Sequence record: LT603033.1
Reading direction: 5' to 3' (one strand)
DNA length: 64,000 nucleotides
Positions 15,590-32,820 of this stretch are shown here, piece after piece (the stretch's first letter is position 1; each line of letters opens with the position of its first letter). A model generated the notes under the pieces. That model saw nothing but the letters and a program-made list of their open reading frames with translations, did no database searches and was not told where the DNA came from. The translations under genes were made by a program, and so were the position numbers.

Positions 15590-15649
15590 CAGTACTGAAT
15601 TTTGGGCGTAACTATGCACCCGGTGGGCTTGAGTCTTTCTCGACTTGAT
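15590..15649 (-). ncRNA. candidate two-hairpin RNA/leader element, family R1
   Basis: Minus-strand TTGCTT-16-TATAAT promoter, AGTC-GAGAAA-GACT hairpin, AGCCCACCGGGTGC at 15616-15629. Confidence 0.5.
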
Positions 15650-15749
15650 GGAACTATTATACAGTACTGGAAAAATAAAGCAATACCCTGGATGAAAAAA
15701 GTTTTAATTAATTTGCTTGCCATCCTGGGCCGGACTATGGTACTATAAT

Positions 15750-15797
15750 TCAGTACTGAGAAAGTGCGTTAACCTGCTAGGGTGCGGGAGTGTATCC
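15750..15797 (+). ncRNA. candidate R1 element (degenerate)
   Basis: AACCTGCTAGGGTGCGGGAGTGTATC at 15771; tail matches the 17766 copy. Confidence 0.4.
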
Positions 15798-16060
15798 TTT
15801 TTTTATATCTTGAATTTTGGACGGATCTTCCCACCCCCTGGGGTATCCGCTTTCTCGCGTCTATGTAGTAATTATACGCTTTTTCAGGATCAAGTCAATA
15901 CCTAAAAACAAAATAATTGAAAATAATTTAACGCGTTTAAACGGCCCGTAAAGCCCTGGAATGATTGGAATGGTGCAAATGTATAGCTTGGGTGTATTAA
16001 TGCGTTAGAATGCGTCTGAGGCCGTTTTACGGGGTGTAGTAGTGATTTGGTGGATTGATT

Positions 16061-16200
16061 CAGTACTGAATAATAGTACTCCTATATAGAAAGATAGTTC
16101 CCCTGGATGGTTGCAGTACTGAATAATAGTACTCCTATATAGAAAGATAGTTCCCCTGGATGGTTGCAGTACTGAATAATAGTTCCCCTATATAGAAAGA
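16061..16200. repeat. 53-bp tandem repeat, about 2.6 copies
   Basis: Unit CAGTACTGAATAATAGTACTCCTATATAGAAAGATAGTTCCCCTGGATGGTTG at 16061 and 16114, partial at 16167. Confidence 0.95.
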
Positions 16201-16231
16201 AAACTATTTTAAAAGTATTTGTAGAAAGTAC

Positions 16232-16259
16232 TTGCAAACTATGTTTAACGGCGTATAAT
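16232..16259 (+). promoter_or_regulatory. first early-type sigma70 promoter
   Basis: AAAGTAC-TTGCAA-16-TATAAT-GTTTTACAT; near-copies recur before 16771, 17453 and at about 17930. Confidence 0.8.
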
Positions 16260-16314
16260 GTTTTACATCGAGAGCGGGAACACTTCCCGCTACATATTAC
16301 GAGAGATTAAAACG

Positions 16315-16677
16315 ATGGCGACTCAAATCACTAAAATTATTGCTAACCTGGTTAACTTTCGCGACGAGATGAAAGATCTTCCGGCAGAAACGGTAAAAAT
16401 TCACATTGCAGCTTATCGGGAACTTATTGCAATGTTACCTCTTAAGCGTGAACAATACGCCGCTACCGTGATGCTTGATGCGATGATCCATAAGATGATC
16501 GCCAGTGATTTAACGATGGTTTATCAGTATATGGGCGAAAATTTCGCGGTGTATAGTAAACCAGTACCAGGAATGGAAAGTACAGAAGTATTACACGGTT
16601 TAAATTTAAAACAAGATGCATGGGATAATATGCCTCGTTTCCTGGTATGGGCTGACAGTGGCAAAATTTACGAATAA
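16315..16677 (+). CDS. hypothetical early protein
   Basis: Start trimmed to MATQITK after promoter, hairpin and GAGAG RBS. Confidence 0.75.
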   Translation: MATQITKIIANLVNFRDEMKDLPAETVKIHIAAYRELIAMLPLKREQYAATVMLDAMIHKMIASDLTMVYQYMGENFAVYSKPVPGMESTEVLHGLNLKQDAWDNMPRFLVWADSGKIYE

Positions 16678-16770
16678 GTTTAATAAAGTACTTGCAAACT
16701 ATGTTTAATGGCGTATAATGTTTTACATCAGGTGGGGAATAGTTCCCCACTATATAAGAGGATTAAAAAA

Positions 16771-17010
16771 ATGGCTAAATCAAAAATGTTCTTAGGTCAC
16801 AAAAACAAAACTCATTGGAATGTAAGCCTTTGGATTAATAACGATGAATCATTATACCGGTTGGCCCTGGACTTTATTGCCGCCAATACTAATCGCAATG
16901 ATGCGGCCCGTCATATGATGTTATTTTTAGAACAGACTGGACAAGATAAAACACCGGACGGATTCAAATATAGCACTACTGCGATCCGTGCGGCAATGGT
17001 TGGAATGTAA
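16771..17010 (+). CDS. conserved phage hypothetical protein (HWNVSLWINNDE motif)
   Basis: GAGGA RBS; motif recognisable from many phage early proteins; function unknown. Confidence 0.75.
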   Translation: MAKSKMFLGHKNKTHWNVSLWINNDESLYRLALDFIAANTNRNDAARHMMLFLEQTGQDKTPDGFKYSTTAIRAAMVGM

Positions 17011-17098
17011 TAGAATAGAATTTATTTAAAGTACTATTGCACGGGGATAGTACTTTATAATAGTGTTTTATTCATACACCAACGATAAGGGCAACAGC

Positions 17099-17365
17099 AT
17101 GAATATTAAGTATTTTGCGACGCGTGAACAAGCTCGGATCGCCGCACGCCAGGACGGGGCAACGTTTAAAGATATGGGCGTACAATCGGAACGTGGTAAA
17201 CGTTGGGCCATTGTAAAGCGTAGTACCGCCAGATCATTACAGTACTGGTTAGCGGCCTTAAAAAGACCCGATAGTGTATCGCGACGAGTGGTAGAAATAA
17301 AGCTCGACCGAAAGGGCAACCGCGTGACCGTGTACCGTACTAAAAAGATTGCAGTACTTGAATAA
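17099..17365 (+). CDS. hypothetical early protein, paralog of 28556-28951
   Basis: Shared ATRE-AR-AR-G-FKDMG, RWA and DRKGNRVTVY. Confidence 0.75.
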   Translation: MNIKYFATREQARIAARQDGATFKDMGVQSERGKRWAIVKRSTARSLQYWLAALKRPDSVSRRVVEIKLDRKGNRVTVYRTKKIAVLE

Positions 17366-17452
17366 AAAGTACTTGCAAACTATGTTTAAAGGCGTATAAT
17401 GTTTTACATCGAGAGCGGGAACTCTTCCCGCCTATAACCTGGAGTAATAAAA

Positions 17453-17683
17453 ATGACTAATATGTATATGACTGAAGTTAAAACCGTAAAAGATACTACC
17501 ACGAATAAAACTACTTACTTACAGCGGATCTGTGGTGTATGGCAACGTATCAGCAAATCAAAGTACTTTAAATTAACATCATATGCAAACCGTTCGGATT
17601 CATTCAGTACTGAAATAAAAGGTAATAAAGTACACCAATACGGCACTTATTATTATTATAGCCTGGACGCGATTGCAGTATAA
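17453..17683 (+). CDS. hypothetical early protein
   Basis: GGAG RBS, own promoter and leader hairpin. Confidence 0.75.
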   Translation: MTNMYMTEVKTVKDTTTNKTTYLQRICGVWQRISKSKYFKLTSYANRSDSFSTEIKGNKVHQYGTYYYYSLDAIAV

Positions 17684-17748
17684 GCAGTTTACAAATCTTT
17701 ACAATTGCCGGTATTGACTTATTTTGTCAGTACTGGCATAATGTATTC

Positions 17749-17795
17749 ATTGGCAGATAAGCCGTAGCCCATAGGGTGCGGGAGTGTATCTATAG
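17749..17795 (+). ncRNA. candidate R1 element
   Basis: TTGACT-17-CATAAT promoter; GGC-AGATAA-GCC hairpin; AGCCCATAGGGTGC at 17766-17779. Confidence 0.5.
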
Positions 17796-17804
17796 AAAAA
17801 GTAG

Positions 17805-17851
17805 TTTATTACAGTTACAATTGTGCACCCGGTGGGTTAGCTGTTGTCATG
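17805..17851 (-). ncRNA. candidate R1 element, convergent with the 17749 copy
   Basis: Minus-strand TTGACA-17-CATAAT; AACCCACCGGGTGC at 17825-17838. Confidence 0.5.
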
Positions 17852-17965
17852 GGGTATATTATGCCAGTACTGGATAGTGCTGTCAATACCTTTTTACTAT
17901 TCAGTACTGAAAACTATTTTTAAAAAGTACTTGCAAACTATGTTTAAAGGCGTATAATGTTTTAC

Positions 17966-18040
17966 ATCAGGACGGGGAACGAAATAAGTAACTCCCCATT
18001 AAGTAGCCCAGGAGTAAGGCACACGAAAAACTCCCCTGAT
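17966..18040 (+). ncRNA. candidate structured RNA, family R2
   Basis: ATCAGG/CCTGAT closing stem, GGGGA/TCCCC and GGAGT/ACTCC hairpins; promoter upstream, next promoter directly downstream. Confidence 0.55.
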
Positions 18041-18108
18041 AAAATAGTTTGAAAATTGTTTTTAAAAGCGTATAATACTTACATCAACTACTGAATGAGG
18101 GTTACAAA

Positions 18109-18720
18109 ATGAAAACTATCACTACTACTACTTTCGTTATGGATTTTTCTGAATTGAACGCAGAACAAAAAACGTCAGCTATCGAACTGGTTCGGGAACG
18201 TGAAAAAAACTCAAACGACAATTATTTTTCTGAAAGTGAAATTGAATACTATAAAGAAACAGTACTACCGGAATATGGCATTAATGACGCTGAAATACAA
18301 TTCAGTGGTTTTTGGTCCCAGGGTGACGGTGCATCAATCAGTACTGACCACGTTGACGCAGTGAAGTTTTTACGCAAGGTAAGAGCATTAACTAAGTATC
18401 GCTCAATCCGTCACCTGCTGAATGAAGATGATTTGGCGATGAGTGTAAAGCGTTCTCACTCTCACTACTCGCATGAGAACACTGTAAGCGGGTACATTGA
18501 ATCGGCTTACACTGATTTAACCGCAAAACAAGAAACGTTAGTTAATGAGCTTGAGGAACTACTCACTGAAACTATTCGTGAATTGTCACGCAAGTTGTAC
18601 CGTGATTTAGAGAATGCATATGAGGATCAATTCACTACTGAAAACATCGTAGCACTGATTGAGGGTAACGAGTATCAATTCAATGTTATTGATGGCGTAG
18701 TAGAATCAATCGAATATTAA
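18109..18720 (+). CDS. acidic phage protein with FSGFWSQGDGAS motif
   Basis: 203 aa; motif recalled from a phage family often auto-annotated as antitoxin; function unverified. Confidence 0.7.
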   Translation: MKTITTTTFVMDFSELNAEQKTSAIELVREREKNSNDNYFSESEIEYYKETVLPEYGINDAEIQFSGFWSQGDGASISTDHVDAVKFLRKVRALTKYRSIRHLLNEDDLAMSVKRSHSHYSHENTVSGYIESAYTDLTAKQETLVNELEELLTETIRELSRKLYRDLENAYEDQFTTENIVALIEGNEYQFNVIDGVVESIEY

Positions 18721-18812
18721 TTCAAAAAGTACTGGACACTAAGCAATAAAGGCGTATAATACTTTATATCGAGAGCGGGAATAGTTCCCGCTACTAATGA
18801 GGAATACTACAA

Positions 18813-18977
18813 ATGAATACTTTTACCTTCGCTCAATTGAACGCCCTGGATGTATTGTCTGATGCTTTGCGGGATGCAACTGAAAGCGGTTTATTTGACA
18901 ATGTTGACATTCACCCTGATGTAATTAATAATTTTTGTGATGCTATCGCAGAAGTACTGGAAGATCTAAAAAAATAA
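18813..18977 (+). CDS. small acidic hypothetical protein (54 aa)
   Basis: GAGGA RBS, own promoter and hairpin; not in track. Confidence 0.65.
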   Translation: MNTFTFAQLNALDVLSDALRDATESGLFDNVDIHPDVINNFCDAIAEVLEDLKK

Positions 18978-18987
18978 TAGAAAGTAC

Positions 18988-19015
18988 TTGCAATTAGTTT
19001 TTAGTACTGTATAAT
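18988..19015 (+). promoter_or_regulatory. early sigma70 promoter
   Basis: TTGCAA-16-TATAAT with AGTACT in the spacer. Confidence 0.8.
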
Positions 19016-19065
19016 AGTTTACATAGAGGGGAGAAATGGTTCTCCCTGGTAATGAGGAAAATAAA

Positions 19066-19287
19066 ATGGCTAATATCACTACTCTTTCTCAACTGGAAGC
19101 ACTGGTTAAATCTATGCGGGAACATGCAGACAATATCGGCGTAAAAGATCCAGCCGTTTGCTTCTGCGACGAAATGAATGATGATACACTGGTAATAGCA
19201 GAAGTACAAGATATTTCTAACTATTCATCGCGTTACACTGGCGGCGTAGCAAATAAAGGTGACTTCTGTTTATACCTTACCAAATAA
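19066..19287 (+). CDS. hypothetical early protein
   Basis: Start trimmed to MANITTL; GAGGA RBS. Confidence 0.75.
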   Translation: MANITTLSQLEALVKSMREHADNIGVKDPAVCFCDEMNDDTLVIAEVQDISNYSSRYTGGVANKGDFCLYLTK

Positions 19288-19334
19288 CAACGCGGGGAGA
19301 TAATAACTCCCCGTTACTTTTTCAGTACTGAATC

Positions 19335-19387
19335 ATTTAATAGACGGATCTCGGCACCCTGTGGGTTAGTGACTGTATCGTCTTTAT
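19335..19387 (-). ncRNA. candidate R1 element (antisense)
   Basis: Minus-strand TTGACA-17-CATAAT; GAC-GATACA-GTC hairpin; AACCCACAGGGTGC at 19354-19367. Confidence 0.5.
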
Positions 19388-19529
19388 GTAGTAATTATGC
19401 CAGTACTGGATGCACTTGTCAACAACTATTTTTCAAATACTTTTTATTAAAATACTTGCTAATAGTTTTTAAACGCGTATAATGTTTTGCATAGGGGAGC
19501 GGTTCCCCTGGTAACTAAGGAATAAGAAA

Positions 19530-19766
19530 ATGCTTGAACAAATCAAATCAACGTCTGCTAATGTAACGGGAACGGTATCACACTTTATTGGTGATGAATC
19601 GCGGGGCGTTCCCTATTGTGCTGTACATGTAAACACTGAGGGTAACTACTGGTTTACGGTTTACGGATCATATTCATTTGGACGGCCAGGGCATCAAAAA
19701 ATTCTGGATAAAGTACAACCAACGGGTAAAAATATCACTGCCGAAATGTTTTATAAAAAATCATAA
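19530..19766 (+). CDS. hypothetical early protein
   Basis: AAGGA RBS, promoter, hairpin. Confidence 0.75.
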   Translation: MLEQIKSTSANVTGTVSHFIGDESRGVPYCAVHVNTEGNYWFTVYGSYSFGRPGHQKILDKVQPTGKNITAEMFYKKS

Positions 19767-19850
19767 AGTACTTGATAATAGTTTTTAGTACTGTACAATA
19801 TTTTACATCGCACGGGGGAGCGGTTCCCCCTGGTAACTAAGGATAATCAA

Positions 19851-20150
19851 ATGAAAATTGCAATCATCGCCCTGGCTTTATCTGTTTCCTCTTTCGCTGT
19901 TAACGCGTCGTTAGATGTACCTAGTGAAAAATTCATTCAGTGTACTGTTGCGATGACAGATGAAAGTACTGGCGAGATTGTTTTAAAGGATTTAGAGATC
20001 CAGTCAGAAGCATTTAAAAGCGGCCCGTTCCATGAAGAAGACGAAAAAGGTAGCACGACAATTTATTACGATGTAAGTACTAAGCGTGGATCGGTCACGG
20101 TTATGGATACTGAGAAAGTAACGCACACCGGAGTAATTAACTGTTTATAA
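19851..20150 (+). CDS. putative exported protein
   Basis: Sec-type signal MKIAIIALALSVSSFAVNA; acidic mature part with 2 Cys. Confidence 0.7.
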   Translation: MKIAIIALALSVSSFAVNASLDVPSEKFIQCTVAMTDESTGEIVLKDLEIQSEAFKSGPFHEEDEKGSTTIYYDVSTKRGSVTVMDTEKVTHTGVINCL

Positions 20151-20167
20151 TATAGTACTGAATCACT

Positions 20168-20195
20168 AGCCCACCTTAAACAGTGGGCTTTTTTG
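20168..20195 (+). terminator. Rho-independent terminator
   Basis: AGCCCAC-CTTAAACA-GTGGGCT-TTTTT; identical copy at about 20894. Confidence 0.8.
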
Positions 20196-20273
20196 TTTTG
20201 TAGTACTGCATACTTTAAAAATAGTTTTAAAAAAGTAGTTGACATTACCACAAAAAGGCGTAGAATGTATTAC

Positions 20274-20335
20274 ATCAAGACGGGGAGCACTAAGTAGACC
20301 GCCAGTAAGTCGAACGAAAAACTGGACACGTCGAT
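20274..20335 (+). ncRNA. candidate R2 structured RNA (short variant)
   Basis: Same TAAGTAG linker and 14-nt AAGNCRNANGAAAA loop, closed by CCAGT/ACTGG; promoter TTGACA-16-TAGAAT at 20239-20266. Confidence 0.45.
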
Positions 20336-20389
20336 AAAACTTTGATACACTAATAAACGTAAACTAAACTTTAATTGAGGATTTATAAA

Positions 20390-20872
20390 ATGGCTAATGT
20401 AAAATCATTCCTGAAAGCACTGATTTCAAACGATACTGTTATTGCTGCTGAATTGCTGGCTGAACTGGATAACGATACAATGAAAGCGGTACGCAACAAT
20501 TTTAACATTGCGTACAGTGAAGCTAAAGAACTGCAAGCCAAAAAGGTAGCAGAACTGGAAGAACAGAAAAAAGCCCGTGAAGCAGAACTACAAGCAACAA
20601 TTGAAAGTATTCAGGCGGCAGTGTCTGGATTGGATCTGGAAGTGGTTGTAGAAATGGCACATAAAGCCCTGGCGGTTAAGTACGGTGAAGATAAGCCGGA
20701 ATCTAAACCTAAAAAATGGATTCAAGAACGTGTTACTGTAGTACTTGATAACGGTGAAGAACATTTGATTCCTGTACGCGGTAACTGCATTGCGGTAGTA
20801 CTGGACGCTATCAAAGAAAGCGGTATGACTCGCGAGGAATGGATCGAAGCTCATCGCAAAGTTGAAGCATAA
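20390..20872 (+). CDS. H-NS-like nucleoid protein
   Basis: Coiled-coil N-half; C-terminus VVLDNGEEHLIPVRGNCIAVVLDAIKESGMTREEWI aligns by eye with E. coli H-NS [36 protein letters not shown]. Confidence 0.6.
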   Translation: MANVKSFLKALISNDTVIAAELLAELDNDTMKAVRNNFNIAYSEAKELQAKKVAELEEQKKAREAELQATIESIQAAVSGLDLEVVVEMAHKALAVKYGEDKPESKPKKWIQERVTVVLDNGEEHLIPVRGNCIAVVLDAIKESGMTREEWIEAHRKVEA

Positions 20873-20893
20873 CAATTAAAGTACTGAATCAAT

Positions 20894-20920
20894 AGCCCAC
20901 CTTAAACAGTGGGCTTTTTT
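20894..20920 (+). terminator. Rho-independent terminator
   Basis: AGCCCAC-CTTAAACA-GTGGGCT-TTTTT. Confidence 0.8.
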
Positions 20921-21156
20921 GTGTCTATAGTATTCCAGTCCACTAGCACCGCCTAGAATCGATTCTAACGCATTAAACTGATTATCTGATACATCGCCCT
21001 AGCTGGTGGCGTTAAGGTCGTTAGAAAGCGATTGAGAGTGTTTAAAGTATTTTGCAAAAAGTAATAAAAAGTACTTGCATGATTAAGAGATTAGCGTATA
21101 ATGTTTTACATCGAAAGGGGAAACGGTTCTCCTTCCAAATCAAAGGAATCAAAACA

Positions 21157-21384
21157 ATGGCTATTATCATTACTCGCGTATCTGGTACTACTGGCAATTC
21201 TTCTACTGTTGCAGTCATTACTAACAAGGCAGGTGCGGAATTGCAAAATGCAATGAATACCTGGGCCGTTAATGAGTTCGGTCAGTGGGCAAGTGTAGCA
21301 TACATTGAAACCTATCAAGTGCCGACCATTAGTTTAACGGATCTTGGTGTGGAACGTATCCTTTGCTTGGATGAATTAAATTAA
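21157..21384 (+). CDS. hypothetical early protein
   Basis: Start trimmed to MAIIITR; AAGGA RBS. Confidence 0.75.
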   Translation: MAIIITRVSGTTGNSSTVAVITNKAGAELQNAMNTWAVNEFGQWASVAYIETYQVPTISLTDLGVERILCLDELN

Positions 21385-23591: not shown

Positions 23592-23627
23592 AAAGTGGTT
23601 GACTTCGGTCAGCCATTTTGCTATTAT
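23592..23627 (+). promoter_or_regulatory. composite terminator hairpin / promoter
   Basis: AAAAGTGGTTGAC-TTCG-GTCAGCCATTTT hairpin contains -35 TTGACT, then 17 nt to TATTAT. Confidence 0.7.
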
Positions 23628-23633
23628 ATATTC

Positions 23634-23682
23634 ATTGAGAGATAGCTCACTAGCCCACAGGGTGCAGGAGTGTATCTATTGT
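23634..23682 (+). ncRNA. candidate R1 element
   Basis: TGAG-AGATAG-CTCA hairpin; AGCCCACAGGGTGC at 23652-23665. Confidence 0.5.
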
Positions 23683-23800
23683 ATAATGTTTGAGTACTGA
23701 AAACTATTTTTAAAAAAGTACTTGAAAACTATCTCAATTGGCGTATAATGTTTTACATCGCAAGGGGAAACGGTTTCCCCTGGTAATAAGGAAACGAATC

Positions 23801-25256: not shown

Positions 25257-25295
25257 TATATTGACAATATCCTCCAGTACTGGCATAATACTTAC

Positions 25296-25345
25296 ATCAA
25301 GACGAGAACGTCACTAACCCATAGGGTGCACAAATGTAACTGTAT
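25296..25345 (+). ncRNA. candidate R1 element
   Basis: TTGACA-17-CATAAT at 25261-25289; GACG-AGAA-CGTC hairpin; AACCCATAGGGTGC at 25316-25329. Confidence 0.5.
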
Positions 25346-25587
25346 AATATTGATCAAAAAATGATCTGATCAATACTTGATCAATTTGCGTAAAGTAGTA
25401 TAATTCTATGCAGTTGGTTAGACGAAAGGTTATGATTAGTAGTGCAAGTGTATAAAAATTTTCATGGTGTATCGTTTCGCACATATGGGGATGAATATGT
25501 GGTATCATGTGGATTGGAAAAAGTAAGAACAAGTAATATTATTGTCGCATTACAGTACTATAGTATTTTTATAATGAGGTTAAAATA

Positions 25588-26762: not shown

Positions 26763-26779
26763 TAGAAGGAGTACAGCTT

Positions 26780-26872: not shown

Positions 26873-27042
26873 TTCAAGTAGAATTATCAGTACTAAAAGA
26901 TCTGTTTTATCGGATTGGTACTACTGGCGAATATCCGAAGGGTGATAATGCAAAACTTTACGTATCACTCGACTTATGGCAACGCGAACAATTAGCAACG
27001 GCCTGGCGTAAAGGCAAAGCAGATAGCGAGGTGAAAGCATGA
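26869..27042 (+). CDS. small hypothetical protein (57 aa)
   Basis: AGGAG RBS, ATGA overlap. Confidence 0.6.
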   Translation: MIQVELSVLKDLFYRIGTTGEYPKGDNAKLYVSLDLWQREQLATAWRKGKADSEVKA

Positions 27043-27188
27043 AAGAATTCTTATTTGAAGTAGTGTTTCAAGGTGTCGGTAATAACCAACTGATTCGCTC
27101 AAGTGGTTACAATGTTAACCAGGCATGGAATAACATTAAACAAATGTACCCGAACGCTATCACATATCGCAACCCGAAAGAAGTTTAA
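27039..27188 (+). CDS. small hypothetical protein (49 aa)
   Basis: GAGG RBS, ATGA overlap. Confidence 0.55.
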   Translation: MKEFLFEVVFQGVGNNQLIRSSGYNVNQAWNNIKQMYPNAITYRNPKEV

Positions 27189-27240
27189 AAATAATTGAAA
27201 AAGGGATTGACTCCGGTCAGTCCCTTTGCTATTATATACG

Positions 27241-27285
27241 CATAGAAACAAATCAGCCCACCGGGTGCATAAATGTATCTATTAT
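27241..27285 (+). ncRNA. candidate R1 element
   Basis: Composite hairpin/promoter AAAGGGATTGAC-TCCG-GTCAGTCCCTTT; AGCCCACCGGGTGC at 27255-27268. Confidence 0.5.
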
Positions 27286-27360
27286 ATGCTGGTGGCTAGT
27301 ACTGAAAACTATTTTTAAAAAGTACTTGCATTGTACTTAGAATCAAGTATAATGTTTTAC

Positions 27361-27433
27361 ATCAGGACGGGGAACGAAACAAGTAACCCCGTTAAGTAGT
27401 CCAGGAGTAAGACATAAGAAAACCTCCCCTGAT
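27361..27433 (+). ncRNA. candidate R2 structured RNA
   Basis: ATCAGG/CCTGAT, ACGGGG/CCCCGT and GGAG/CTCC stems; paralog of 17966-18040. Confidence 0.55.
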
Positions 27434-27502
27434 AAAATAGTTTGACAATAGAAAGTAAACGAGTATAATACTTACATCAACCACTGATAAGGAAACATAA
27501 AA

Positions 27503-27778
27503 ATGCGGATTCTACTGACAGCTAACGAAATCGAACAAGTACTGACTACTAACCTGGAAGACTGGAAACGTGAAGCAGATATCCAGGCGGTTCAACGGCT
27601 TAACGATGAGTTAACGCCGGATGACTTAAGCAAGATTGTAGATCCTCAATTCTACGAAGATATCCACGACACCGCGTTAAGCGTCGAGGATGTACTAGAT
27701 AAGCACTACATTGATATTGATTTGCAGGTTTACGGTCGTAAAAACTTTATCACTATTCACGACATTTACAATAATTAA
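27503..27778 (+). CDS. acidic hypothetical early protein
   Basis: AAGGA RBS; D/E-rich. Confidence 0.75.
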   Translation: MRILLTANEIEQVLTTNLEDWKREADIQAVQRLNDELTPDDLSKIVDPQFYEDIHDTALSVEDVLDKHYIDIDLQVYGRKNFITIHDIYNN

Positions 27779-27865
27779 GTATTGACAAAGTATCTTAGTA
27801 CTGTATAATAGTTTACATCAAGCGAGGGGAATGGTTCCCCTCCTAACTAAAAGAGAGAAATAAAA

Positions 27866-28048
27866 ATGGCTAAGTGCACTATCTGCAAGAAAGAAATAGT
27901 ATTAGTTCCAAGTGCCCGTGAACGTGCCGCTCGGTTCGGTGGCAAAGCGTCAGACTATACAAAAATGTTTACTACCCATACAGCTTGCCAGGTAGCAAAA
28001 CGTTCACAAGAAAGCGTAGAATTAATGCGTAAACTTTCCAAAAAATAA
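27866..28048 (+). CDS. small Cys/His (putative Zn-binding) protein
   Basis: CTIC...HTAC; promoter at 27782-27809. Confidence 0.7.
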   Translation: MAKCTICKKEIVLVPSARERAARFGGKASDYTKMFTTHTACQVAKRSQESVELMRKLSKK

Positions 28049-28136
28049 GTATTGACAAAGTATCTTAGTACTGTATAATAGTTTACATCAAGTGAGGGGA
28101 AACGGTTCCCCTCCTAACAAAGAGAGAGAAATAAAA

Positions 28137-28460
28137 ATGGCTATGATCCTTGCCCAGAAAGTGGAACTGAAAATTGTAACCTCCTTTGACATTAATGTTA
28201 ATCGGTGGACTGATTCACACGGCAATACTTACCACTCTTGCTACGTGTCTGCGTTAATTGGCGACCGCTGGGAAGACCTGGGACACGAAACCTTTACATA
28301 CGGTTACGGTACACAAGGCGAATACACGGGCTTGGAGATCATTAAAGAAACCGTTATAGGTTTCAACCCGAAAGAAAAAGTTATTCACCGCATCGAGGAA
28401 GAGATCAACAAAGAAATAACAGTTCGCTACCACGATGTAAAACGTAAGAAAGACATGTAA
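28137..28460 (+). CDS. hypothetical early protein, paralog of 21703-22026
   Basis: RWTDSHGNTYHSC, FTYGYG. Confidence 0.8.
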   Translation: MAMILAQKVELKIVTSFDINVNRWTDSHGNTYHSCYVSALIGDRWEDLGHETFTYGYGTQGEYTGLEIIKETVIGFNPKEKVIHRIEEEINKEITVRYHDVKRKKDM

Positions 28461-28555
28461 TAGAATCCATTTAAAGTACTATTTGACATTGCCCAGATAG
28501 TACTTTATAATAGACTCTAACTTGTAGTACTAACTCAACTAATAGGATGTATACC

Positions 28556-28951
28556 ATGATTACTAAATTCTACGCTACCCGTGAAGCTGCCCGTATTGTT
28601 GCACGCGAGGAAGGAGCAGCATTTAAAGACATGGGCAAAGATGCACCGAAAGGTCAACGCTGGGCCGTACAGTTCAAAGAAATCTCTGATATCGTGAATT
28701 CACCGGAGCCAGTACTAACAGCAGCAGAACTAAAACGAGCGGATTTACTGGCGGCAGTACTTAACGCACAAGATGAATTTATCGCTGATTCTGATATCAA
28801 AGTACAGACAAACCATACCGCTTGGACTCACGCGGATCACCTGGCAAACCTTAAGCGTCCAAGTGAACTGGTTCGCAACCAGAAAGAGATCCGACACGAC
28901 CGTAAGGGTAATCGTGTAACAGTATACAGTAAACGCCGCCAGGTTATCTAA
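28556..28951 (+). CDS. hypothetical early protein, paralog of 17099-17365
   Basis: KFYATREAAR...FKDMG...DRKGNRVTVY; terminator GGCGGGA-TCAGT-TCCCGCC-T6 follows. Confidence 0.8.
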   Translation: MITKFYATREAARIVAREEGAAFKDMGKDAPKGQRWAVQFKEISDIVNSPEPVLTAAELKRADLLAAVLNAQDEFIADSDIKVQTNHTAWTHADHLANLKRPSELVRNQKEIRHDRKGNRVTVYSKRRQVI

Positions 28952-29013
28952 TAACTTGCAGTACTAACAACACGGCGGGATCAGTTCCCGCCTTTTTTAT
29001 AGGATAAACTAAA

Positions 29014-29268
29014 ATGATTAAGGTACAACTATCTAAAGATAATATCTTGCGGGTACACTATAAAGCACCACAGAGAATCATCACAAAGGCCGTACAGCTT
29101 GCTAATGAGTTTATTAATGGTAACCTATTACCAAGGAAGTTAAGCAACGGAAAACTGCGTGTAATCGATGTAGATACTAACAACAGAATAGTAATTGAGA
29201 ACACAGGAAAGATAAACCTATATGAACACCAACAATATAATAAGAAAATAAAACTAATATCACGTTGA
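29014..29268 (+). CDS. basic protein resembling RelE/ParE-fold phage proteins
   Basis: PRKL...VIDV...RIV...LYEHQQYNK pattern; recalled resemblance only. Confidence 0.5.
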   Translation: MIKVQLSKDNILRVHYKAPQRIITKAVQLANEFINGNLLPRKLSNGKLRVIDVDTNNRIVIENTGKINLYEHQQYNKKIKLISR

Positions 29269-29321
29269 CAGTACTCAATTGTTTTAGTATTATGTACACA
29301 TACCAACACGGGAGAAACAAA

Positions 29322-29540
29322 ATGAAATTATCTAAAATCGAAAAGAAAACTATTGATGAAGCAGTTAAGCACGGTTATACCTTTCGTAATGATTCACATT
29401 TTACCAATTTTCAACAAGGCCAAAGGACTATTAAAAAACTAATTGACAAAGGTTTATTAGTTAAAGTAGATAACGGTAACGGCATTGAGTATCAGCCAAC
29501 CCAAGACACATTATCTTTAAAGAAATATGCAATTATCTAA
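29322..29540 (+). CDS. hypothetical protein (possible winged helix)
   Basis: GGAG RBS; TIKKLIDKGLL. Confidence 0.7.
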   Translation: MKLSKIEKKTIDEAVKHGYTFRNDSHFTNFQQGQRTIKKLIDKGLLVKVDNGNGIEYQPTQDTLSLKKYAII

Positions 29541-29597
29541 TTGACAGTACTCAAATGTTTTAGTACTATATGTACATACCAACACGGGGAAAACAAA

Positions 29598-29840
29598 ATG
29601 ATTACTTTAGAAAAACGTATCAAAGAAACTACATCGCTGGTGGAACTGTTAACAGTACTGAAATGCCGTACTACTCGGTTTAGTACACCGGACTTTATTA
29701 ATATGGTTGATGTTAACGGTCGTTATCGCATTGCAGTAGAACAAGGAACAGCGAAAGTATTCAGTACTAAAAACACTAAGGAAGTGATTCACGCTGTAAG
29801 TGTTAAAAAAGTAGTTGCCATTGATAGTAAAGTACTGTAA
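29598..29840 (+). CDS. hypothetical early protein
   Basis: Upstream region duplicates that of 29322. Confidence 0.7.
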   Translation: MITLEKRIKETTSLVELLTVLKCRTTRFSTPDFINMVDVNGRYRIAVEQGTAKVFSTKNTKEVIHAVSVKKVVAIDSKVL

Positions 29841-29871
29841 GATAGTTTCATTAACTCAAGGAGAACATGCA

Positions 29872-30456
29872 ATGCGTAATTATACTAAATTCATCCGTAC
29901 ACTGTCAGAAATGGAAACCAACAAAGAGATCCTTTCAGCTTGTCGGTTAGCTGGTCTGGAGATCATCGGTGCGGGTTCTTCCCGTATTGTATTCGCTTTA
30001 AATGATCGGTTAGTGATCAAGGTCGCGAATTGTGATGCGGGTGTAGAACAAAATGAAACTGAATGTAAGGTATGGAATTTTTTAGATTATGACCGCCCTC
30101 AATTGAAACAGTACTTTGCAAAGGTGCATATGCATTTATGCGATCCTGATAATATGTTTATCGTTATGGATCGGTTGAGTACTGCAAGTAAAGGCAGTGT
30201 GAAGCACGTTAACGCGTGCAACGAATTAAAGTACAATATTAAACGTAATGCCATTGAACGCCAGCACCGCTTTGCTGATGCACTACAACACGTCGATGAT
30301 ACATTATCAACACTAACGATAAGAGATATCAGAAAACAGAATATCGGCCAGGATCGTAATGGCCTTATTAAAGTACTTGATTACGGTTTAACCCGCAATA
30401 TCTGGAATCAGTACTATAAAAAGCGTGATGTAAAAGCCGTAACTATAACACGATAA
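29872..30456 (+). CDS. protein kinase-like protein (Ser/Thr type)
   Basis: Ordered motifs: IGAGSSRIVF (Gly loop), VIK, QNETE (alphaC Glu), RDIRKQN (catalytic D...N), DYG; AAGGAG RBS. Confidence 0.8.
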   Translation: MRNYTKFIRTLSEMETNKEILSACRLAGLEIIGAGSSRIVFALNDRLVIKVANCDAGVEQNETECKVWNFLDYDRPQLKQYFAKVHMHLCDPDNMFIVMDRLSTASKGSVKHVNACNELKYNIKRNAIERQHRFADALQHVDDTLSTLTIRDIRKQNIGQDRNGLIKVLDYGLTRNIWNQYYKKRDVKAVTITR

Positions 30457-30508
30457 AAAAGATTAAAAAAGGGATTGACTCCGGTCAGTCCCTTTGCTAA
30501 TATATATT

Positions 30509-30557
30509 CATTGAGAGATAACTCACTGACCCACAGGGTGCATAAGTGTATCTATTA
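30509..30557 (+). ncRNA. candidate R1 element
   Basis: Composite hairpin/promoter at about 30468; TGAG-AGATAA-CTCA; GACCCACAGGGTGC at 30528-30541. Confidence 0.5.
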
Positions 30558-30687
30558 TATAAGTATTCAGTACTGAAAACTATTTTAAAGTATTTGATAA
30601 AAAGTACTTGCATTGTACTTAGAATCAAGTATAATGTTTTATATCGAGAGGGGGAAATGGTTCTCCCTGGCAATAAGGAATAAAATC

Positions 30688-30909
30688 ATGACTACAATGA
30701 CTTGCATTTACGCTTCCAATCTTCTGAATGATGCGGCCTTTAATGTTGATTCAGAATATCAATGTTATCGGGATGAAAATAAAAAAGTTTTTGTAGTTGA
30801 TAATAATGGTTTCCATATTGAATTACAATCCGGTTTCACTGGTGTTGATGGTAAATCAGTATGGGGCGTACAGGATGATAAAGGCACATATCATTTTAAA
30901 CGTAATTAA
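30688..30909 (+). CDS. hypothetical early protein
   Basis: Promoter TTGCAT-16-TATAAT at 30608-30635; start trimmed. Confidence 0.75.
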   Translation: MTTMTCIYASNLLNDAAFNVDSEYQCYRDENKKVFVVDNNGFHIELQSGFTGVDGKSVWGVQDDKGTYHFKRN

Positions 30910-30993
30910 GTATTGACAAAGTATCTTAGTACTGTATAATAGTTTACATCAAGGGGAGAATAGTTCTCCCCGATACTAAAAGGAAACAAAATT

Positions 30994-31266
30994 ATGTCCA
31001 GCTACTCCGCTACTATGATCATTAAAGATATGAACGGTAATCCTACTTCTGCTGGTGGATCATTTGGAAACATTAACTTAGATGGTCGGTTATCAATTGA
31101 ATCAGCCATCAATGCAGCGAAAGAAGTTTTTAAGAATGAATGTACTGTTAGTAAGCTGGATTATATGGGATTCGCTATCGAGAAAACTACTCGTTTTGTG
31201 AACTACAAAAATCCACTGATGATTGATACTAACCTGAAAGCTAACGAAGTGGGGTACTTATTATGA
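30994..31266 (+). CDS. hypothetical early protein
   Basis: Own promoter, hairpin, AGGA RBS. Confidence 0.75.
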   Translation: MSSYSATMIIKDMNGNPTSAGGSFGNINLDGRLSIESAINAAKEVFKNECTVSKLDYMGFAIEKTTRFVNYKNPLMIDTNLKANEVGYLL

Positions 31267-31454
31267 CAGTTGAAGAAGTTAAAAAAGTACTGGCAGTACT
31301 ACGCTATCATAACCATTGCAAGGTTAAGAATGATCCTGATTATGTTGATTCATCCCTGGAGGAAGACACATTAAACGCAATAAGCCATATGCAAACATTA
31401 GCAAAGCGTATGACCGAAAAGAATAGACCGGACTATATCGGAAATAAAATTTAA
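31263..31454 (+). CDS. hypothetical protein
   Basis: ATGA overlap. Confidence 0.7.
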   Translation: MTVEEVKKVLAVLRYHNHCKVKNDPDYVDSSLEEDTLNAISHMQTLAKRMTEKNRPDYIGNKI

Positions 31455-31540
31455 AAAGTACTTGCATTGTAGTTAGATTAACGTATAATGTTTTACATAG
31501 AGCGGGGGAATAGTTCTCCCGCCAGTCCGGGAGATACACC

Positions 31541-31807
31541 ATGAACACTATCGAAATCACTATCAATGCACACGTATACGACAACGTAGTACTGCAAACT
31601 ACTATGACCGCTAATGATACCAGTACTTTGCGGAATACCGTTGTAAGTGCTGTATGTGCTGCAATCGGTGATGTAGCCCTGGAAAATGCAGAACACATCA
31701 ACAACGGTTTCACTATGTGCAAACGTGATAACGCAAAACATATCATCTTAGAAGGTTACGGCGGTGTAGAATATAATCTTTATATGAAAAAAGTACTTGC
31801 AAAGTAA
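31541..31807 (+). CDS. hypothetical early protein
   Basis: Promoter at 31462-31489, GGAG RBS. Confidence 0.75.
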   Translation: MNTIEITINAHVYDNVVLQTTMTANDTSTLRNTVVSAVCAAIGDVALENAEHINNGFTMCKRDNAKHIILEGYGGVEYNLYMKKVLAK

Positions 31808-31872
31808 CTAAAACAAAGTATAATGTTTTGCATAGGGGGAGATATCCTCCCCCACTAATAAGGAGTACTAAA

Positions 31873-32097
31873 ATGGCTAACTTTGATGAACTGATGCGGG
31901 AAGTAGCTAACCTGGCAGAAGAGAAGAAATCATTCGATTCTATCTATAACACCGCTTACAGTGATTCAGTACTGGCATGTACTCAGGATCAAAAAGATGA
32001 ACTAATCGCCACATATCATGAAGCATGGAAGTACTACCGCCAATGGGAGAAAGAAGAAAGCGAGTCTACCATCAACGGCATCAATAATCTAATCTAA
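31873..32097 (+). CDS. hypothetical early protein
   Basis: Promoter at 31797-31824, AAGGAG RBS. Confidence 0.75.
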   Translation: MANFDELMREVANLAEEKKSFDSIYNTAYSDSVLACTQDQKDELIATYHEAWKYYRQWEKEESESTINGINNLI

Positions 32098-32172
32098 AGT
32101 TTTATTTCAGTACTATTGACATAGCTTGATAGTACTGATATGATAACTTTACTAACTACAAGGGGAAACATC

Positions 32173-32430
32173 ATGGAACAATTCACACAATATCGGGTAA
32201 ATCCTCAAGCTATGGCCTACGTAGAAGACCATAAAACGTTACCAGTACTGCAACCAGTTAAAGGCCATATCTATCGTGCGATGGCGTGGAGTACTGCCCA
32301 GGATGGCTATAAAACCGTTGCCGTTGGTATGTACTGCGGTAATGGTGAATGGTTTGATCCAAATAATCCGGTAGCAATTGACAGTACTGAAAAAATGAAA
32401 TGGGCCGACTACATCGAAGATATTTCATAA
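32173..32430 (+). CDS. hypothetical early protein
   Basis: Start trimmed to MEQFTQY. Confidence 0.75.
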   Translation: MEQFTQYRVNPQAMAYVEDHKTLPVLQPVKGHIYRAMAWSTAQDGYKTVAVGMYCGNGEWFDPNNPVAIDSTEKMKWADYIEDIS

Positions 32431-32520
32431 AAACTATTTGACAGTACTAACCAGTAATGTATAATGTTTTACATAGAGCGGGGGAATAGTTCTCCCGCCA
32501 ATAGTTTGGAGTAAAACATT

Positions 32521-32721
32521 ATGTCTATCGCTCTCGCCCTGGTTGAAGTACTGAAAGAAGCTAAAGCCAACCTTATCGATGTACAGATTAAGGAATTGCA
32601 AAATGGTTTAATCGGCTGTACTTGTACCGCTGGTGGAGCGGCAGACTATCGAGAACACGAATCACTAGAATCGTTGGTCCGGTATCTTACAATCATCGTA
32701 GAAGATTGGAGAATCATCTAA
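32521..32721 (+). CDS. hypothetical early protein
   Basis: Promoter at 32438-32465, GGAG RBS. Confidence 0.75.
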   Translation: MSIALALVEVLKEAKANLIDVQIKELQNGLIGCTCTAGGAADYREHESLESLVRYLTIIVEDWRII

Positions 32722-32776
32722 CAAAAAAGAATAAAAAAGGGATTGACTCCGGTCAGTCCCTTTGCTATTATATACG

Positions 32777-32820
32777 CATAGACAAAAACTAGCCCACAGG
32801 GTGCATAGGTGTATCTAAAA
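32777..32820 (+). ncRNA. candidate R1 element
   Basis: Composite hairpin/promoter at about 32738; AGCCCACAGGGTGC at 32791-32804. Confidence 0.5.

What the first reader, a model, noticed from the sequence alone, without database searches (positions are those of the whole stretch)
15590..32820. R1: ten promoter-driven, ORF-less two-hairpin elements with core RCCCAYMGGGUGC, on both strands
Seen: the core occurs at 15616(-), 15771(+, degenerate), 17766(+), 17825(-), 19354(-), 23652, 25316, 27255, 30528 and 32791. Each lies about 13-25 nt downstream of the predicted start of its own sigma70 promoter. In most copies it follows a first hairpin whose stem sequence changes but still pairs (TGAG/CTCA, GACG/CGTC, AGTC/GACT, GGC/GCC, GAC/GTC) around an A-rich loop. 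No RBS or ORF follows; 17766/17825 are convergent and 15616/15771 divergent. Known: HK022 put RNA is a promoter-proximal two-hairpin element that binds RNA polymerase and antiterminates; lambda boxB is a GCCC/GGGC hairpin bound by N. Inference: an undescribed multicopy small-RNA family, acting either as a put/nut-like antitermination signal or as a decoy or sponge for a host RNA-binding or defence protein.
Basis: partly seen in the sequence, partly recalled or inferred. Interest (0 to 1): 0.85.

Follow-up and report, generated by a model that had tools for sequence, protein, structure and literature searches.

The report
Multicopy early RNA motif, jumbo phage
The terminal repeat of this giant E. 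coli phage carries eleven copies of a short, promoter-driven, non-coding RNA module with a covarying hairpin and an invariant CCC/GGGUGC mini-hairpin; it occurs only in Rak2-like jumbo phages, matches no catalogued RNA family, and its job is still unknown.

Summary
The window is Escherichia phage vB_Eco_slurp01 (Asteriusvirus, a Rak2-like jumbo phage). The core RCCCAYMGGGTGC occurs 9 times exactly (0 expected), and there are 2 degenerate copies.

- **Location.** All copies lie in 15.6-32.8 kb, which corresponds to the ~20 kb direct terminal repeat of relatives.
- **Breadth.** A covariance model finds 80 copies (73 distinct) in 8 related stretches and 8-13 per genome in five further genomes. 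Each genome holds them in one 17-20 kb stretch.
- **Promoter.** In all 80 copies checked, a sigma70 promoter sits at a fixed distance upstream in the same orientation.
- **RNA evidence.** Hairpin 1 covaries (23 different stems; G-U 9, A-C 0). The CCC/GGG hairpin tolerates loops of 3 or 4 nt. A YRYCY tract varies only in ways that still pair with GGGUG.
- **Absent elsewhere.** It is missing from Rfam, E. coli K-12, 185,579 species genomes, HK022, PA5oct and the literature strings searched. Lambda gave one chance-level hit.
- **Context.** Isolated minus-strand copies end at a strong terminator (~100-nt sRNA). Plus-strand copies run into a second, gene-proximal promoter. Tail-to-tail convergent pairs recur in every genome checked.

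My best reading is a protein-recognised early RNA module acting mainly as a free, high-dose small RNA (about 0.4). A put-like role in cis is less likely (about 0.2). No transcript data could be found.

The parts
15594..15652 (-). R1 element, core GCCCACCGGGTGC at 15616-15628. It points leftward towards the end of the terminal repeat. Tail subtype CGCCCAAAATTC.
   Evidence: 45.4 bits
15656..15683 (-). Promoter of R1 15594-15652: TTGCTT, 16-bp spacer, TATAAT, with CAGTACTG in the spacer.
15717..15807 (+). Promoter (TTGCCA-18-TACTAT) plus the degenerate R1 copy. Here the GGGUGC...UAUCC hairpin is extended and followed by U7, which looks like an intrinsic terminator at 15779-15798.
   Evidence: (E 0.046)
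15809..15898 (-). Degenerate R1 copy (core CCCCAGGGGGTGG at 15831-15843) and its promoter TTGACT-16-TATAAT (15871-15898). It converges on 15747-15807.
   Evidence: (44.7 bits)
17714..17801 (+). Promoter (TTGACT-17-TGgCATAAT) plus the R1 element at 17744-17801.
17803..17886 (-). R1 element at 17803-17862 (no hairpin-1 stem) plus its promoter at 17858-17886. It lies tail to tail with the previous copy.
19283..19422 (-). Complete predicted sRNA unit: promoter 19394-19422, R1 element 19332-19390, an AU-rich spacer with UUCAGUACUGAA, and the bidirectional terminator 19292-19314.
23592..23687 (+). PeSL-like hairpin that contains the -35 (23592-23619), promoter 23599-23627, and R1 element 23629-23687.
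25261..25351 (+). Promoter with CCAGTACTGG in the spacer, plus R1 element 25293-25351. The whole unit 25257-25577 is absent from phage G17.
27200..27290 (+). PeSL-like hairpin and promoter, plus R1 element 27231-27290 (no hairpin-1 stem). A Chi site follows at 27288-27295.
30468..30563 (+). PeSL-like hairpin 30468-30495, promoter 30475-30503, and R1 element 30505-30563.
32736..32826 (+). PeSL-like hairpin and promoter, plus R1 element 32767-32826 (no hairpin-1 stem).
23722..23800 (+). Example of the second, gene-proximal promoter with its 5' GC leader hairpin and Shine-Dalgarno sequence, which follows plus-strand R1 copies. Others start at 25377, 27326, 30608 and 17931.

Best explanation
R1 is a family of short structured non-coding RNA modules that host sigma70 RNA polymerase transcribes from very strong early promoters. 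All copies lie inside the ~20-kb direct terminal repeat of Rak2-like jumbo phages.

**Anatomy of the RNA.** It starts 2-3 nt before an A-rich hairpin (H1; the structure is conserved, the sequence is free). A YUA linker follows, then an invariant mini-hairpin RCCC-N3/4-GGGU (H2), then GC, about 8 nt, and a YRYCY tract that can pair with GGGUG in place of the CCC strand (H3).

**How I think it works.** I propose that the module is a recognition site for a protein, either a conserved host factor or a phage early protein, and that it works mainly as a free, high-dose small RNA.

**How short RNAs would arise.** Some copies use their own terminator (isolated minus-strand copies, about 100 nt; one plus-strand copy of about 55 nt). 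In tail-to-tail convergent pairs, polymerases should collide head-on. Plus-strand copies would need processing, or would stay as the 5' end of operon leaders.

**Shown.** The motif, its promoter coupling, covariation, strand-specific wobble pairs, the terminators, and its restriction to the terminal repeat and to this phage group.

**Inferred.** That it is transcribed as predicted, that it binds a protein, that it acts in trans, and that its effect is titration or recruitment during host take-over.
For: - **Real and non-random.** 9 exact cores against 0 in shuffles. There are 80 model hits in 8 stretches and 8-13 per genome in RaK2, GAP32, 121Q and two uncultured genomes, always in one 17-20 kb block.
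- **In the terminal repeat.** That block is the direct terminal repeat in G17, CBB, vB_Ec-M-J and fEgEco12 (PMC13070987).
- **Promoter coupling.** In all 80 copies a sigma70 promoter lies at a fixed distance upstream in the same orientation.
- **H1 covaries.** All 4 pairs change on both sides. The covariation score is 0.39 against 0.15 in shuffles, and at most 0.074 when partners are slid. The effect is also seen on the MAFFT alignment that was not fitted to the structure. There are 23 different stems, with G-U 9 and A-C 0.
- **H2.** The loop is 3 or 4 nt long, and one copy has a compensated CCU/AGG stem.
- **H3.** 97% of cells pair, and variation is transitions only, against an invariant GGGUG.
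- **Free sRNA units.** Seven isolated minus-strand copies in five phages are followed 14-18 nt later by a strong terminator and face no gene.
- **Convergent pairs** occur in every genome checked.
- **Weak folds.** Predicted folding is marginal, with mean P(H2) 0.53, as expected for a motif held in shape by a partner.
- **Phage-specific.** No counterpart in Rfam, E. coli K-12 or 185,579 species genomes. In viral contigs it occurs only in Rak2-like jumbo-phage contigs, all but one ~345-378 kb.
- **Precedent.** In the related jumbo phage PA5oct, two ncRNAs in the terminal repeat are highly transcribed throughout infection (PMC7318152).
Against: - No transcript data could be found. Only wastewater metatranscriptome contigs were available, and they cannot show starts, ends or strand.
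- Most plus-strand copies have no terminator and run into a second promoter and genes, so a leader role in cis is equally natural for them.
- No partner protein was identified. The early proteins examined are of unknown function, apart from a DksA/TraR zinc-finger protein.
- The phage encodes no Hfq or NusG paralogue.
- H2 and the core are invariant, so their pairing is only weakly supported by covariation.
- The copies are paralogues that are gained and lost as modules. Fixed orientation to the promoter could therefore partly reflect common descent.
Confidence: 0.4

Rival explanations
1. R1 acts in cis on elongation, like HK022 put. The nascent R1 RNA stays bound to the polymerase that made it and makes it resistant to pausing and termination. 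Transcription starting at R1 promoters would then read through the terminator hairpins that punctuate the early region.
For: - The element is promoter-proximal with two hairpins, as put is described (PMC8632103).
- Plus-strand units sit just after terminator hairpins, at the head of ~2-3 kb gene blocks.
- At least one internal strong terminator (28974-28992) is followed 22 nt later by a gene with no promoter between them.
- The invariant GG ... U58 G59 spacing fits the elemental pause consensus G-10 Y-1 G+1. That consensus is from my own knowledge; the column counts are.
Against: - The model finds nothing in HK022.
- The stems are only 3-5 bp.
- A third of the copies lack H1.
- Isolated minus-strand copies face no gene and are followed at once by strong terminators.
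- Convergent pairs would drive modified polymerases into each other.
- Nearly every gene has its own consensus promoter.
Confidence: 0.2
2. R1 is a cis-acting 5' module that sets the fate of its own transcript. It could be a protective 5' structure against RppH and RNase E. It could also be a small switch, with CCC competing against YRYCY for GGGUG, that tunes pausing, attenuation or processing before the second promoter.
For: - H1 begins 2-3 nt from the predicted 5' end.
- H2 and H3 are mutually exclusive, and both are compatible with all copies.
- In the degenerate copy 15747-15807, H3 has become a true terminator with U7.
- The gene-proximal promoters also start with a conserved 5' GC hairpin, so 5' hairpins are a general habit of this region.
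Against: - An invariant 12-nt core across five or more phage genera is far more than a stabilising hairpin needs.
- H3 is mostly G-U pairs and is followed by alternating A/U rather than a U tract, so it would terminate poorly.
- It gives no purpose to the stand-alone minus-strand units.
Confidence: 0.15
3. The conserved core works at the DNA level, as an operator or roadblock just downstream of the strongest early promoters, or as the homology core of a PeSL-like mobile promoter cassette. On this view the RNA structure is incidental.
For: - CCCNNNGGG is an inverted repeat at about +20 to +32, a classic roadblock position.
- The class-2 promoters look like the PeSL terminator-promoter cassettes of T4-like phages (PMC4122927).
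- The BLAST tail to Vibrio and Aeromonas T4-like phages covers only the hairpin and promoter part.
- One unit is a clean indel between slurp01 and G17.
- Wastewater contigs join different variants at R1 units.
Against: - H1 covaries with G-U but no A-C pairs.
- The H2 loop length varies between 3 and 4 nt, which a dimeric DNA binder would not tolerate.
- The YRYCY tract varies by wobble rules on the sense strand only.
- The motif is never found without a promoter in the right orientation, apart from one orphan core in K64-1-like phages.
Confidence: 0.1
4. R1 transcripts form R-loops that prime DNA replication or recombination within the terminal repeat, as at T4 oriF/oriG, the T7 primary origin or ColE1 RNA II.
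For: - The copies are confined to the terminal repeat and occur in both orientations.
- Each is followed by an AT-rich stretch.
- Iteron-like tandem repeats lie nearby (14314-14509 and 16061-16200).
- Chi sites are enriched in the same block.
Against: - Ten or more origins within 17 kb is implausible.
- A covarying RNA hairpin and an invariant mini-hairpin are not needed for an R-loop.
- Nothing ties any copy to a replication gene.
Confidence: 0.05

Closest known systems
PeSL (promoter-early stem-loop) cassettes of T4-like phages (Arbiol 2010; Comeau 2014, PMC4122927)
   Same: Both are composite units of a terminator hairpin (A3-4 G3 ... C3 T3-4) and a near-consensus sigma70 early promoter. 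Both occur in many copies among small early ORFs in plastic regions and are gained and lost as modules. The hairpin and promoter part of R1 units even gives BLAST hits in KVP40-like and Aeromonas T4-like phages.
   Different: A PeSL ends with a Shine-Dalgarno sequence and the start codon of the next gene. An R1 unit instead transcribes a conserved ~55-nt structured non-coding RNA and is then followed by a second promoter. Class-1 R1 promoters have no stem-loop. In R1 units the hairpin encloses the -35 rather than lying upstream of it.
HK022 put RNA (putL, putR)
   Same: Both are promoter-proximal nascent RNA elements of about 60 nt, with two hairpins, in phage early transcripts made by host RNA polymerase.
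   Different: There is no sequence or structure similarity. R1 stems are 3-5 bp. There are 8-13 copies rather than 2. Several copies are followed at once by terminators, or converge on each other, with no genes to read into.
Lambda nut sites (boxA/boxB)
   Same: Both have a hairpin with a purine-rich loop close to an early promoter.
   Different: R1 has no boxA-like conserved block. Its loop is 6-8 nt. The hairpin is missing in a third of the copies. The invariant part (CCC/GGGUGC) has no counterpart in nut. The model's single lambda hit lies inside ninC at chance level.
ncRNA001/002 in the terminal repeat of jumbo phage PA5oct (PMC7318152)
   Same: Both are non-coding transcription units inside the long terminal repeat of a related jumbo phage. 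The PA5oct RNAs are reported as highly transcribed throughout infection.
   Different: The PA5oct RNAs are 236-451 nt and carry no R1 motif (best model hit E 0.35, elsewhere in that genome).
Bacterial terminator-ended small RNAs, such as Hfq-dependent sRNAs
   Same: The isolated minus-strand copies have the standard build: own promoter, structured 5' part with an A-rich (AAN-like) tract, an AU-rich spacer and a Rho-independent terminator, about 100 nt in all.
   Different: R1 shows no extended complementarity to a host RNA and has no host homologue. It is present in 8-13 near-identical core copies, and most copies lack a terminator of their own.

Membership tests
HK022 put RNA | Lies in the nascent transcript shortly downstream of an early promoter | tested here: met
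   The core starts about 20 nt after the predicted +1 in all 80 copies. The promoters and start sites are predicted, not mapped.
HK022 put RNA | Double-hairpin fold of about 65 nt, related to putL/putR | tested here: not met
   The R1 covariance model finds no match in the whole HK022 genome at E up to 10. R1 hairpins have 3-5 bp stems.
HK022 put RNA | Placed so that downstream terminators must be read through to reach genes | tested here: inconclusive
   This is plausible for plus-strand copies, given the terminator at 28974-28992. It is contradicted by seven isolated minus-strand copies that face only a terminator and no gene.
HK022 put RNA | Factor-independent antitermination in cis, lost in rpoC zinc-finger mutants | not testable with these tools
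   This needs reporter or in vitro transcription assays.
Lambda nut (boxA + boxB) | Conserved boxA sequence next to the hairpin | tested here: not met
   The column counts of 73 distinct copies show no conserved block other than YUA, RCCCA, GGGUGC and UCYAU.
Lambda nut (boxA + boxB) | boxB hairpin with a GNRA-like pentaloop in every site | tested here: not met
   The loops are 6-8 nt, and 25 of 73 copies have no stem.
PeSL cassette | Stem-loop (terminator) directly joined to a sigma70-type early promoter | tested here: met
   Hairpins at 23592-23619, 27200-27227, 30468-30495 and 32736-32763 enclose the -35. This holds for 4 of the 11 window copies. The others have CAGTACTG-type spacers and no hairpin.
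PeSL cassette | Shine-Dalgarno sequence and start codon of the downstream gene at the 3' end of the cassette | tested here: not met
   The promoter is followed by the non-coding R1 element, and no ORF is conserved across copies. The gene comes only after a second promoter.
PeSL cassette | Sits at indel or exchange points between close relatives | tested here: inconclusive
   There is one clean indel: 25257-25577 is absent from G17. The excess of BLAST block ends in R1 units (17 of 69, against 9.8% expected) comes mostly from paralogous hits.
Hfq-type terminator-ended sRNA | Own promoter, and a Rho-independent terminator within about 50-300 nt | tested here: met
   This is met only for the isolated minus-strand copies (window 19283-19422 and six in relatives) and for the degenerate copy 15747-15807.
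Hfq-type terminator-ended sRNA | Binds Hfq and base-pairs with target mRNAs | not testable with these tools
   In E. coli K-12 the core and its complement occur only at chance level, 23 matches against 20 for the control.
Any Rfam 15 family | Match to a curated covariance model | tested here: not met
   There are no hits at gathering scores. Permissive scans gave nothing on R1 elements, and only the terminator gave weak hits.

The most novel reading that the evidence does not exclude
R1 is a new class of phage-encoded, multicopy protein-binding RNA. It would be fired from the terminal repeat in the first minutes of infection. It would either soak up a conserved host RNA-binding, RNA-decay or defence-sensing protein, or load onto RNA polymerase as a new kind of self-acting elongation modifier. 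The CCC/GGGUG/YRYCY alternative pairing would serve as its switch.
Probability: 0.3. Interest if true: 0.85.

Novelty: new variant of a known kind. Interest (0 to 1): 0.6.

Why it matters
Rak2-like jumbo phages (Asteriusvirus, Alcyoneusvirus, Mimasvirus, Eneladusvirus and relatives) are used in phage-therapy and biocontrol work, yet the searches here turned up no study of their early programme. A conserved RNA module that is present in 8-13 copies per genome, doubled in virion DNA by the terminal repeat, and driven by the strongest class of promoters in the region is probably one of the most abundant early products.

It offers a compact, testable entry point of about 55 nt, with clear compensatory-mutation designs, into how these phages take over enterobacterial hosts. 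If it binds a host factor or RNA polymerase, it would add a new RNA-based mechanism. Practically, it is a ready candidate for a new RNA family entry. It also explains the long 'empty' intergenic gaps in annotations of these genomes.

Tried and rejected
- **Coding.** No ORF is conserved across copies. Some begin with AUG, but their reading frames differ, and both arms of H1 change.
- **tRNA or tmRNA.** None in the window.
- **Rfam.** Nothing found.
- **Pseudoknot or closing helix.** I tested pairing between the 5' part or the H1 loop and the tail. AGAUA:UAUCU and AGACG:CGUCU pair in some copies. However, cognate 5'-part and tail pairs are no better than non-cognate ones (mean -4.65 against -4.46 kcal/mol, permutation p 0.18).
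- **Mini-hairpin CGG-AGAU-CCG after GGGUG.** It does not covary, by reading the rows.
- **Host mimic or antisense target.**
  - Core matches in E. coli K-12 are at control level, and the model has no hit there.
  - There were 2 chance hits in 185,579 species genomes.
- **put or nut homology.** None found.
- **PA5oct ncRNAs.** They are not R1.
- **Phage-encoded NusG or RfaH paralogue, or Hfq.** Absent.
- **Early proteins of 85 aa or more.** They are of unknown function, apart from a DksA/TraR zinc finger and a sub-threshold kinase-like hit.
- **Expression evidence.** No infection RNA-seq was found. Contigs from four wastewater metatranscriptomes cover the region patchily, and the tool itself warns that they cannot show transcripts.
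- **Literature.** The string search found only unrelated papers. The CBB, fEgEco12 and PeSL papers do not mention the motif.
- **H3 as a general terminator.** Rejected, because it is mostly G-U pairs and has no U tract.

Full report
**Where the window comes from.** The region 15000-33000 is 100% identical to Escherichia phage vB_Eco_slurp01 (LT603033.1, Asteriusvirus PBECO4). Window coordinate equals record coordinate minus 62000. This is a 348-kb Rak2-like jumbo phage. In relatives with mapped ends, the same stretch is the long direct terminal repeat:
- It is annotated as 'Direct Terminal Repeats' in vB_Ec-M-J.
- It is a 22,456-bp 'redundant repeat' in Pectobacterium phage CBB.
- It is 20,993 bp in fEgEco12, confirmed there by restriction digests (PMC13070987).
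- In G17 the motif occurs twice, with an offset of 350,149 bp.

From the G17 alignment, the repeat corresponds to about window 13.55-34.2 kb. The annotation shows about 45 small plus-strand ORFs there, nearly all hypothetical.

**Check of the observation.** RCCCAYMGGGTGC has 9 exact matches in the window and none in 100 shuffles. Allowing two mismatches adds nothing, and the whole 348-kb genome has only these nine.

A covariance model built from 62 copies recovers all nine. Each of the 80 model hits in eight phage stretches has a sigma70-type promoter at a fixed distance upstream in the same orientation. Most score 10-12 of 12 hexamer matches, with a 17-bp spacer and an extended -10 TG (window sites).

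Two promoter flavours occur:
- In one, the -35 TTGACT sits inside a 12-bp hairpin of the form AAAGGGA...TCCCTTT (23592, 27200, 30468, 32736).
- In the other, the palindrome CCAGTACTGG fills the spacer (17714, 17886-, 19422-, 25261).

**Anatomy, from 73 distinct copies.**
- The predicted start is the A of a conserved CA(U).
- H1 is a 3-5 bp stem with a 6-8 nt purine-rich loop that ends in AA. Typical loops are AGAACAA, AGAUAA, GAGAAA and GCGAAA.
- A YUA linker follows.
- H2 is R-CCC-A-Y-M-GGG-U.
- Then come G and C, the four bases R-K-A-R, N, U (95%) and N.
- Then comes Y-R-U-C-Y followed by A-U.

**Evidence that it is an RNA.**
- *H1 covaries.* All four pairs show changes on both sides. For example, one pair reads GC 28, CG 17, UA 3 and another reads CG 21, AU 15, GC 13, UA 6. 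The covariation score is 0.39 against 0.15 ± 0.01 in 500 shuffles (0 of 500 reach it), and at most 0.074 when partners are slid. The same holds on the MAFFT alignment that was not fitted to the structure. Among the 48 copies with a stem there are 23 different stems, with 9 G-U pairs and no A-C pairs. This fits folding of the sense strand only.
- *H1 is not universal.* 25 of 73 copies keep the A-rich stretch without a stem, among them window copies 27256, 32792 and 17825(-).
- *H2 is nearly invariant,* so covariation says little. However, its loop is 3 nt in most copies and 4 nt in others (CCCUAUAGGG in six Serratia phage BF copies, CCCUCAAGGG in K64-1). One CBB copy has a compensated CCU/AGG stem. 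RNAalifold keeps H2 as the only consensus helix.
- *The YRYCY tract pairs with GGGUG.* 96.9% of cells pair. Four of the five pairs vary on one side only, and only by transitions (G-U to G-C, U-A to U-G). This is hard to explain except by pairing with a partner made of G and U.
- *H2 and H3 exclude each other.* Thermodynamic modelling gives mean pair probabilities of 0.29 for H1, 0.53 for H2 and 0.21 for H3, so the folds are marginal on their own.

**Surroundings.** The region has a consensus promoter in front of almost every small gene. There are nine perfect TTGACA-16-TATAAT sites between 24 and 33 kb.

*Plus-strand copies* sit in 230-435-nt intergenic gaps. The order is the upstream gene, the hairpin and promoter, R1, an AT-rich stretch with (T)TCAGTACTGAA, then a second promoter 35-130 nt on (23722, 25377, 27326, 30608, 17931). 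After that come a 5' GC hairpin, a Shine-Dalgarno sequence and the gene. No terminator lies between R1 and that gene.

*Isolated minus-strand copies* are different. In window 19332-19390(-), and in six copies from K64-1, PHA46, BF and CBB, the element is followed 14-18 nt later by a strong GC hairpin with a U-rich tail. That hairpin is the bidirectional terminator of the upstream plus-strand gene, and there is no gene ahead. The predicted product is a 100-106-nt RNA in which H2 and the terminator fold as expected.

*Convergent pairs.* Two copies lie tail to tail, 0-15 nt apart, in every genome examined:
- window: 17744+/17803- and 15747+/15809-
- CBB: three pairs
- GAP32: three pairs
- 121Q, BF, PHA46 and two uncultured genomes: at least one each

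In 15747-15807(+), the H3 hairpin is extended and followed by U7, which is a real terminator shape.

**Distribution.** R1 occurs 8-13 times per genome in RaK2, GAP32, 121Q and two uncultured ~360-kb genomes. The copies always lie within one 17-20 kb stretch.
- A pattern scan of 2.9 million viral contigs hit only Rak2-like jumbo-phage contigs, all but one ~345-378 kb.
- The same pattern in one genome from each of 185,579 prokaryote species gave two hits in unrelated MAGs, about what chance predicts.
- E. coli K-12 has the core at control frequency (23 against 20) and no model hit.
- The related Pseudomonas jumbo phage PA5oct has no R1. It does have two unrelated ncRNAs in its terminal repeat that are highly transcribed throughout infection (PMC7318152).
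- HK022 gives no hit, and lambda gives only a chance-level one inside ninC.
- Rfam 15 has no match at any threshold tried.
- A full-text search for the core strings found only unrelated papers.

**What it most likely is.** The shown facts make R1 an RNA-level element made by host polymerase from the terminal repeat. It appears in three settings: stand-alone terminated units, convergent pairs, and the 5' end of operon transcripts. The common denominator is therefore the RNA module itself, not what lies downstream.

An invariant 12-nt core, next to freely varying stems and loops and with marginal folding energy, is the usual signature of a protein-recognised motif. I therefore favour a protein-binding early RNA that acts mainly as a free, high-dose small RNA, either titrating or recruiting a conserved factor (confidence about 0.4).

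The rivals are these:
- A put-like cis antiterminator (0.2). It is attractive for plus-strand copies. It is contradicted by the terminated minus-strand units and the convergent pairs, and there is no homology to put.
- A cis stabiliser or H2/H3 switch (0.15).
- A DNA-level operator or recombination core of a PeSL-like cassette (0.1). The hairpin and promoter part does resemble the PeSLs of T4-like phages (PMC4122927; BLAST tail), and one unit is an indel against G17. The strand-specific pairing rules argue that the RNA is what is selected.
- R-loop priming (0.05).

No transcript evidence exists. The only RNA libraries holding the sequence are wastewater metatranscriptomes kept as contigs, which cannot show ends or strand.

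**Novelty and verdict.** The promoter-terminator cassette idea is known (PeSL), and small RNAs and leader elements in phage early regions are known kinds. This motif, its restriction to the terminal repeat of Rak2-like jumbo phages, and its three-way deployment appear undescribed. I rate it a new variant of a known kind, with interest 0.6. The ceiling is higher if a host or polymerase partner is found.

Noticed in passing
window 7994-32858 (sites listed): The E. coli Chi sequence GCTGGTGG occurs 11 times against 0.53 expected. Nine sites are on the plus strand inside the terminal-repeat block (15116-32858). Two are on the minus strand to the left (7994, 15104), and 15104(-) and 15116(+) lie back to back. 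This orientation would face RecBCD entering from either physical end of the virion DNA. Two sites lie just after R1 copies (27288, 32851).
   Followed up: partly
whole window, densest at 12-20 kb: The palindrome CAGTACTG occurs 54 times (0.65 expected) and AGTACT 266 times. It fills the spacer of one R1 promoter class, follows most R1 copies as (T)TCAGTACTGAA (a 12-bp palindrome, 8 copies), and abuts the -35 of the gene-proximal promoters (AAGTACTTGCA). It is probably the site of a DNA-binding regulator.
   Followed up: partly
window 14314-14509, 15334-15433 and 16061-16200: Tandem repeats lie near the strand switch and the left boundary of the repeat: 60 bp x 3.3 (100% identical), 16/24/48-bp units, and 53 bp x 2.6. 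The 60-bp and 53-bp units each carry CAGTACTG. The arrays look like iterons, so this may be an origin or an end-processing region.
   Followed up: no
window 16254-33364 (11 sites): A second multicopy leader follows the gene-proximal promoters: TATAAT-GTTTTACAT, then a GGGGA...TCCCC hairpin and a Shine-Dalgarno sequence. It looks like a 5' hairpin for the mRNA and forms a family of its own.
   Followed up: partly
window 25588-25845(+): An early gene encodes a DksA/TraR-type C4 zinc-finger protein (Pfam PF01258, E 1.6e-10). This is a candidate binder of the RNA polymerase secondary channel. It lies just downstream of the R1 unit at 25293-25351.
   Followed up: partly
window 25257-25577 against L002 (G17): The whole R1 unit, with its TGATCA-rich spacer and extra promoter, is present in slurp01 and TH47 but absent from G17, where the flanking genes abut. 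R1 units therefore behave as insertable modules.
   Followed up: partly
L007 18095-18113; L003 10491-10509 and 11352-11370; L004 10191-10210: In relatives, near-consensus Fur boxes sit between or just after R1 copies (GATAATGATAATCATTTAC, 2-3 mismatches). In CBB, a LexA-box-like TACTGT-N8-ACAGTA forms the terminator after a minus-strand copy. No site this close to the Fur consensus was found in the window itself (best 4-5 mismatches).
   Followed up: partly
window 21703-22026 and 28137-28460: Two early ORFs of 107 aa belong to the same PHROG (phrog_6246), so they are paralogues within the terminal repeat. The ORF at 29872-30456 has a sub-threshold protein-kinase-like hit (E 0.002).
   Followed up: no
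window 23001-29000: Contigs from wastewater metatranscriptomes carry variants of this region at 90-99% identity. Some contigs join at, or diverge from, R1 units (for example at 25290, 25293/23653 and 27279). This suggests that strains differ by exchanges at these units.
   Followed up: no
   Followed up: no
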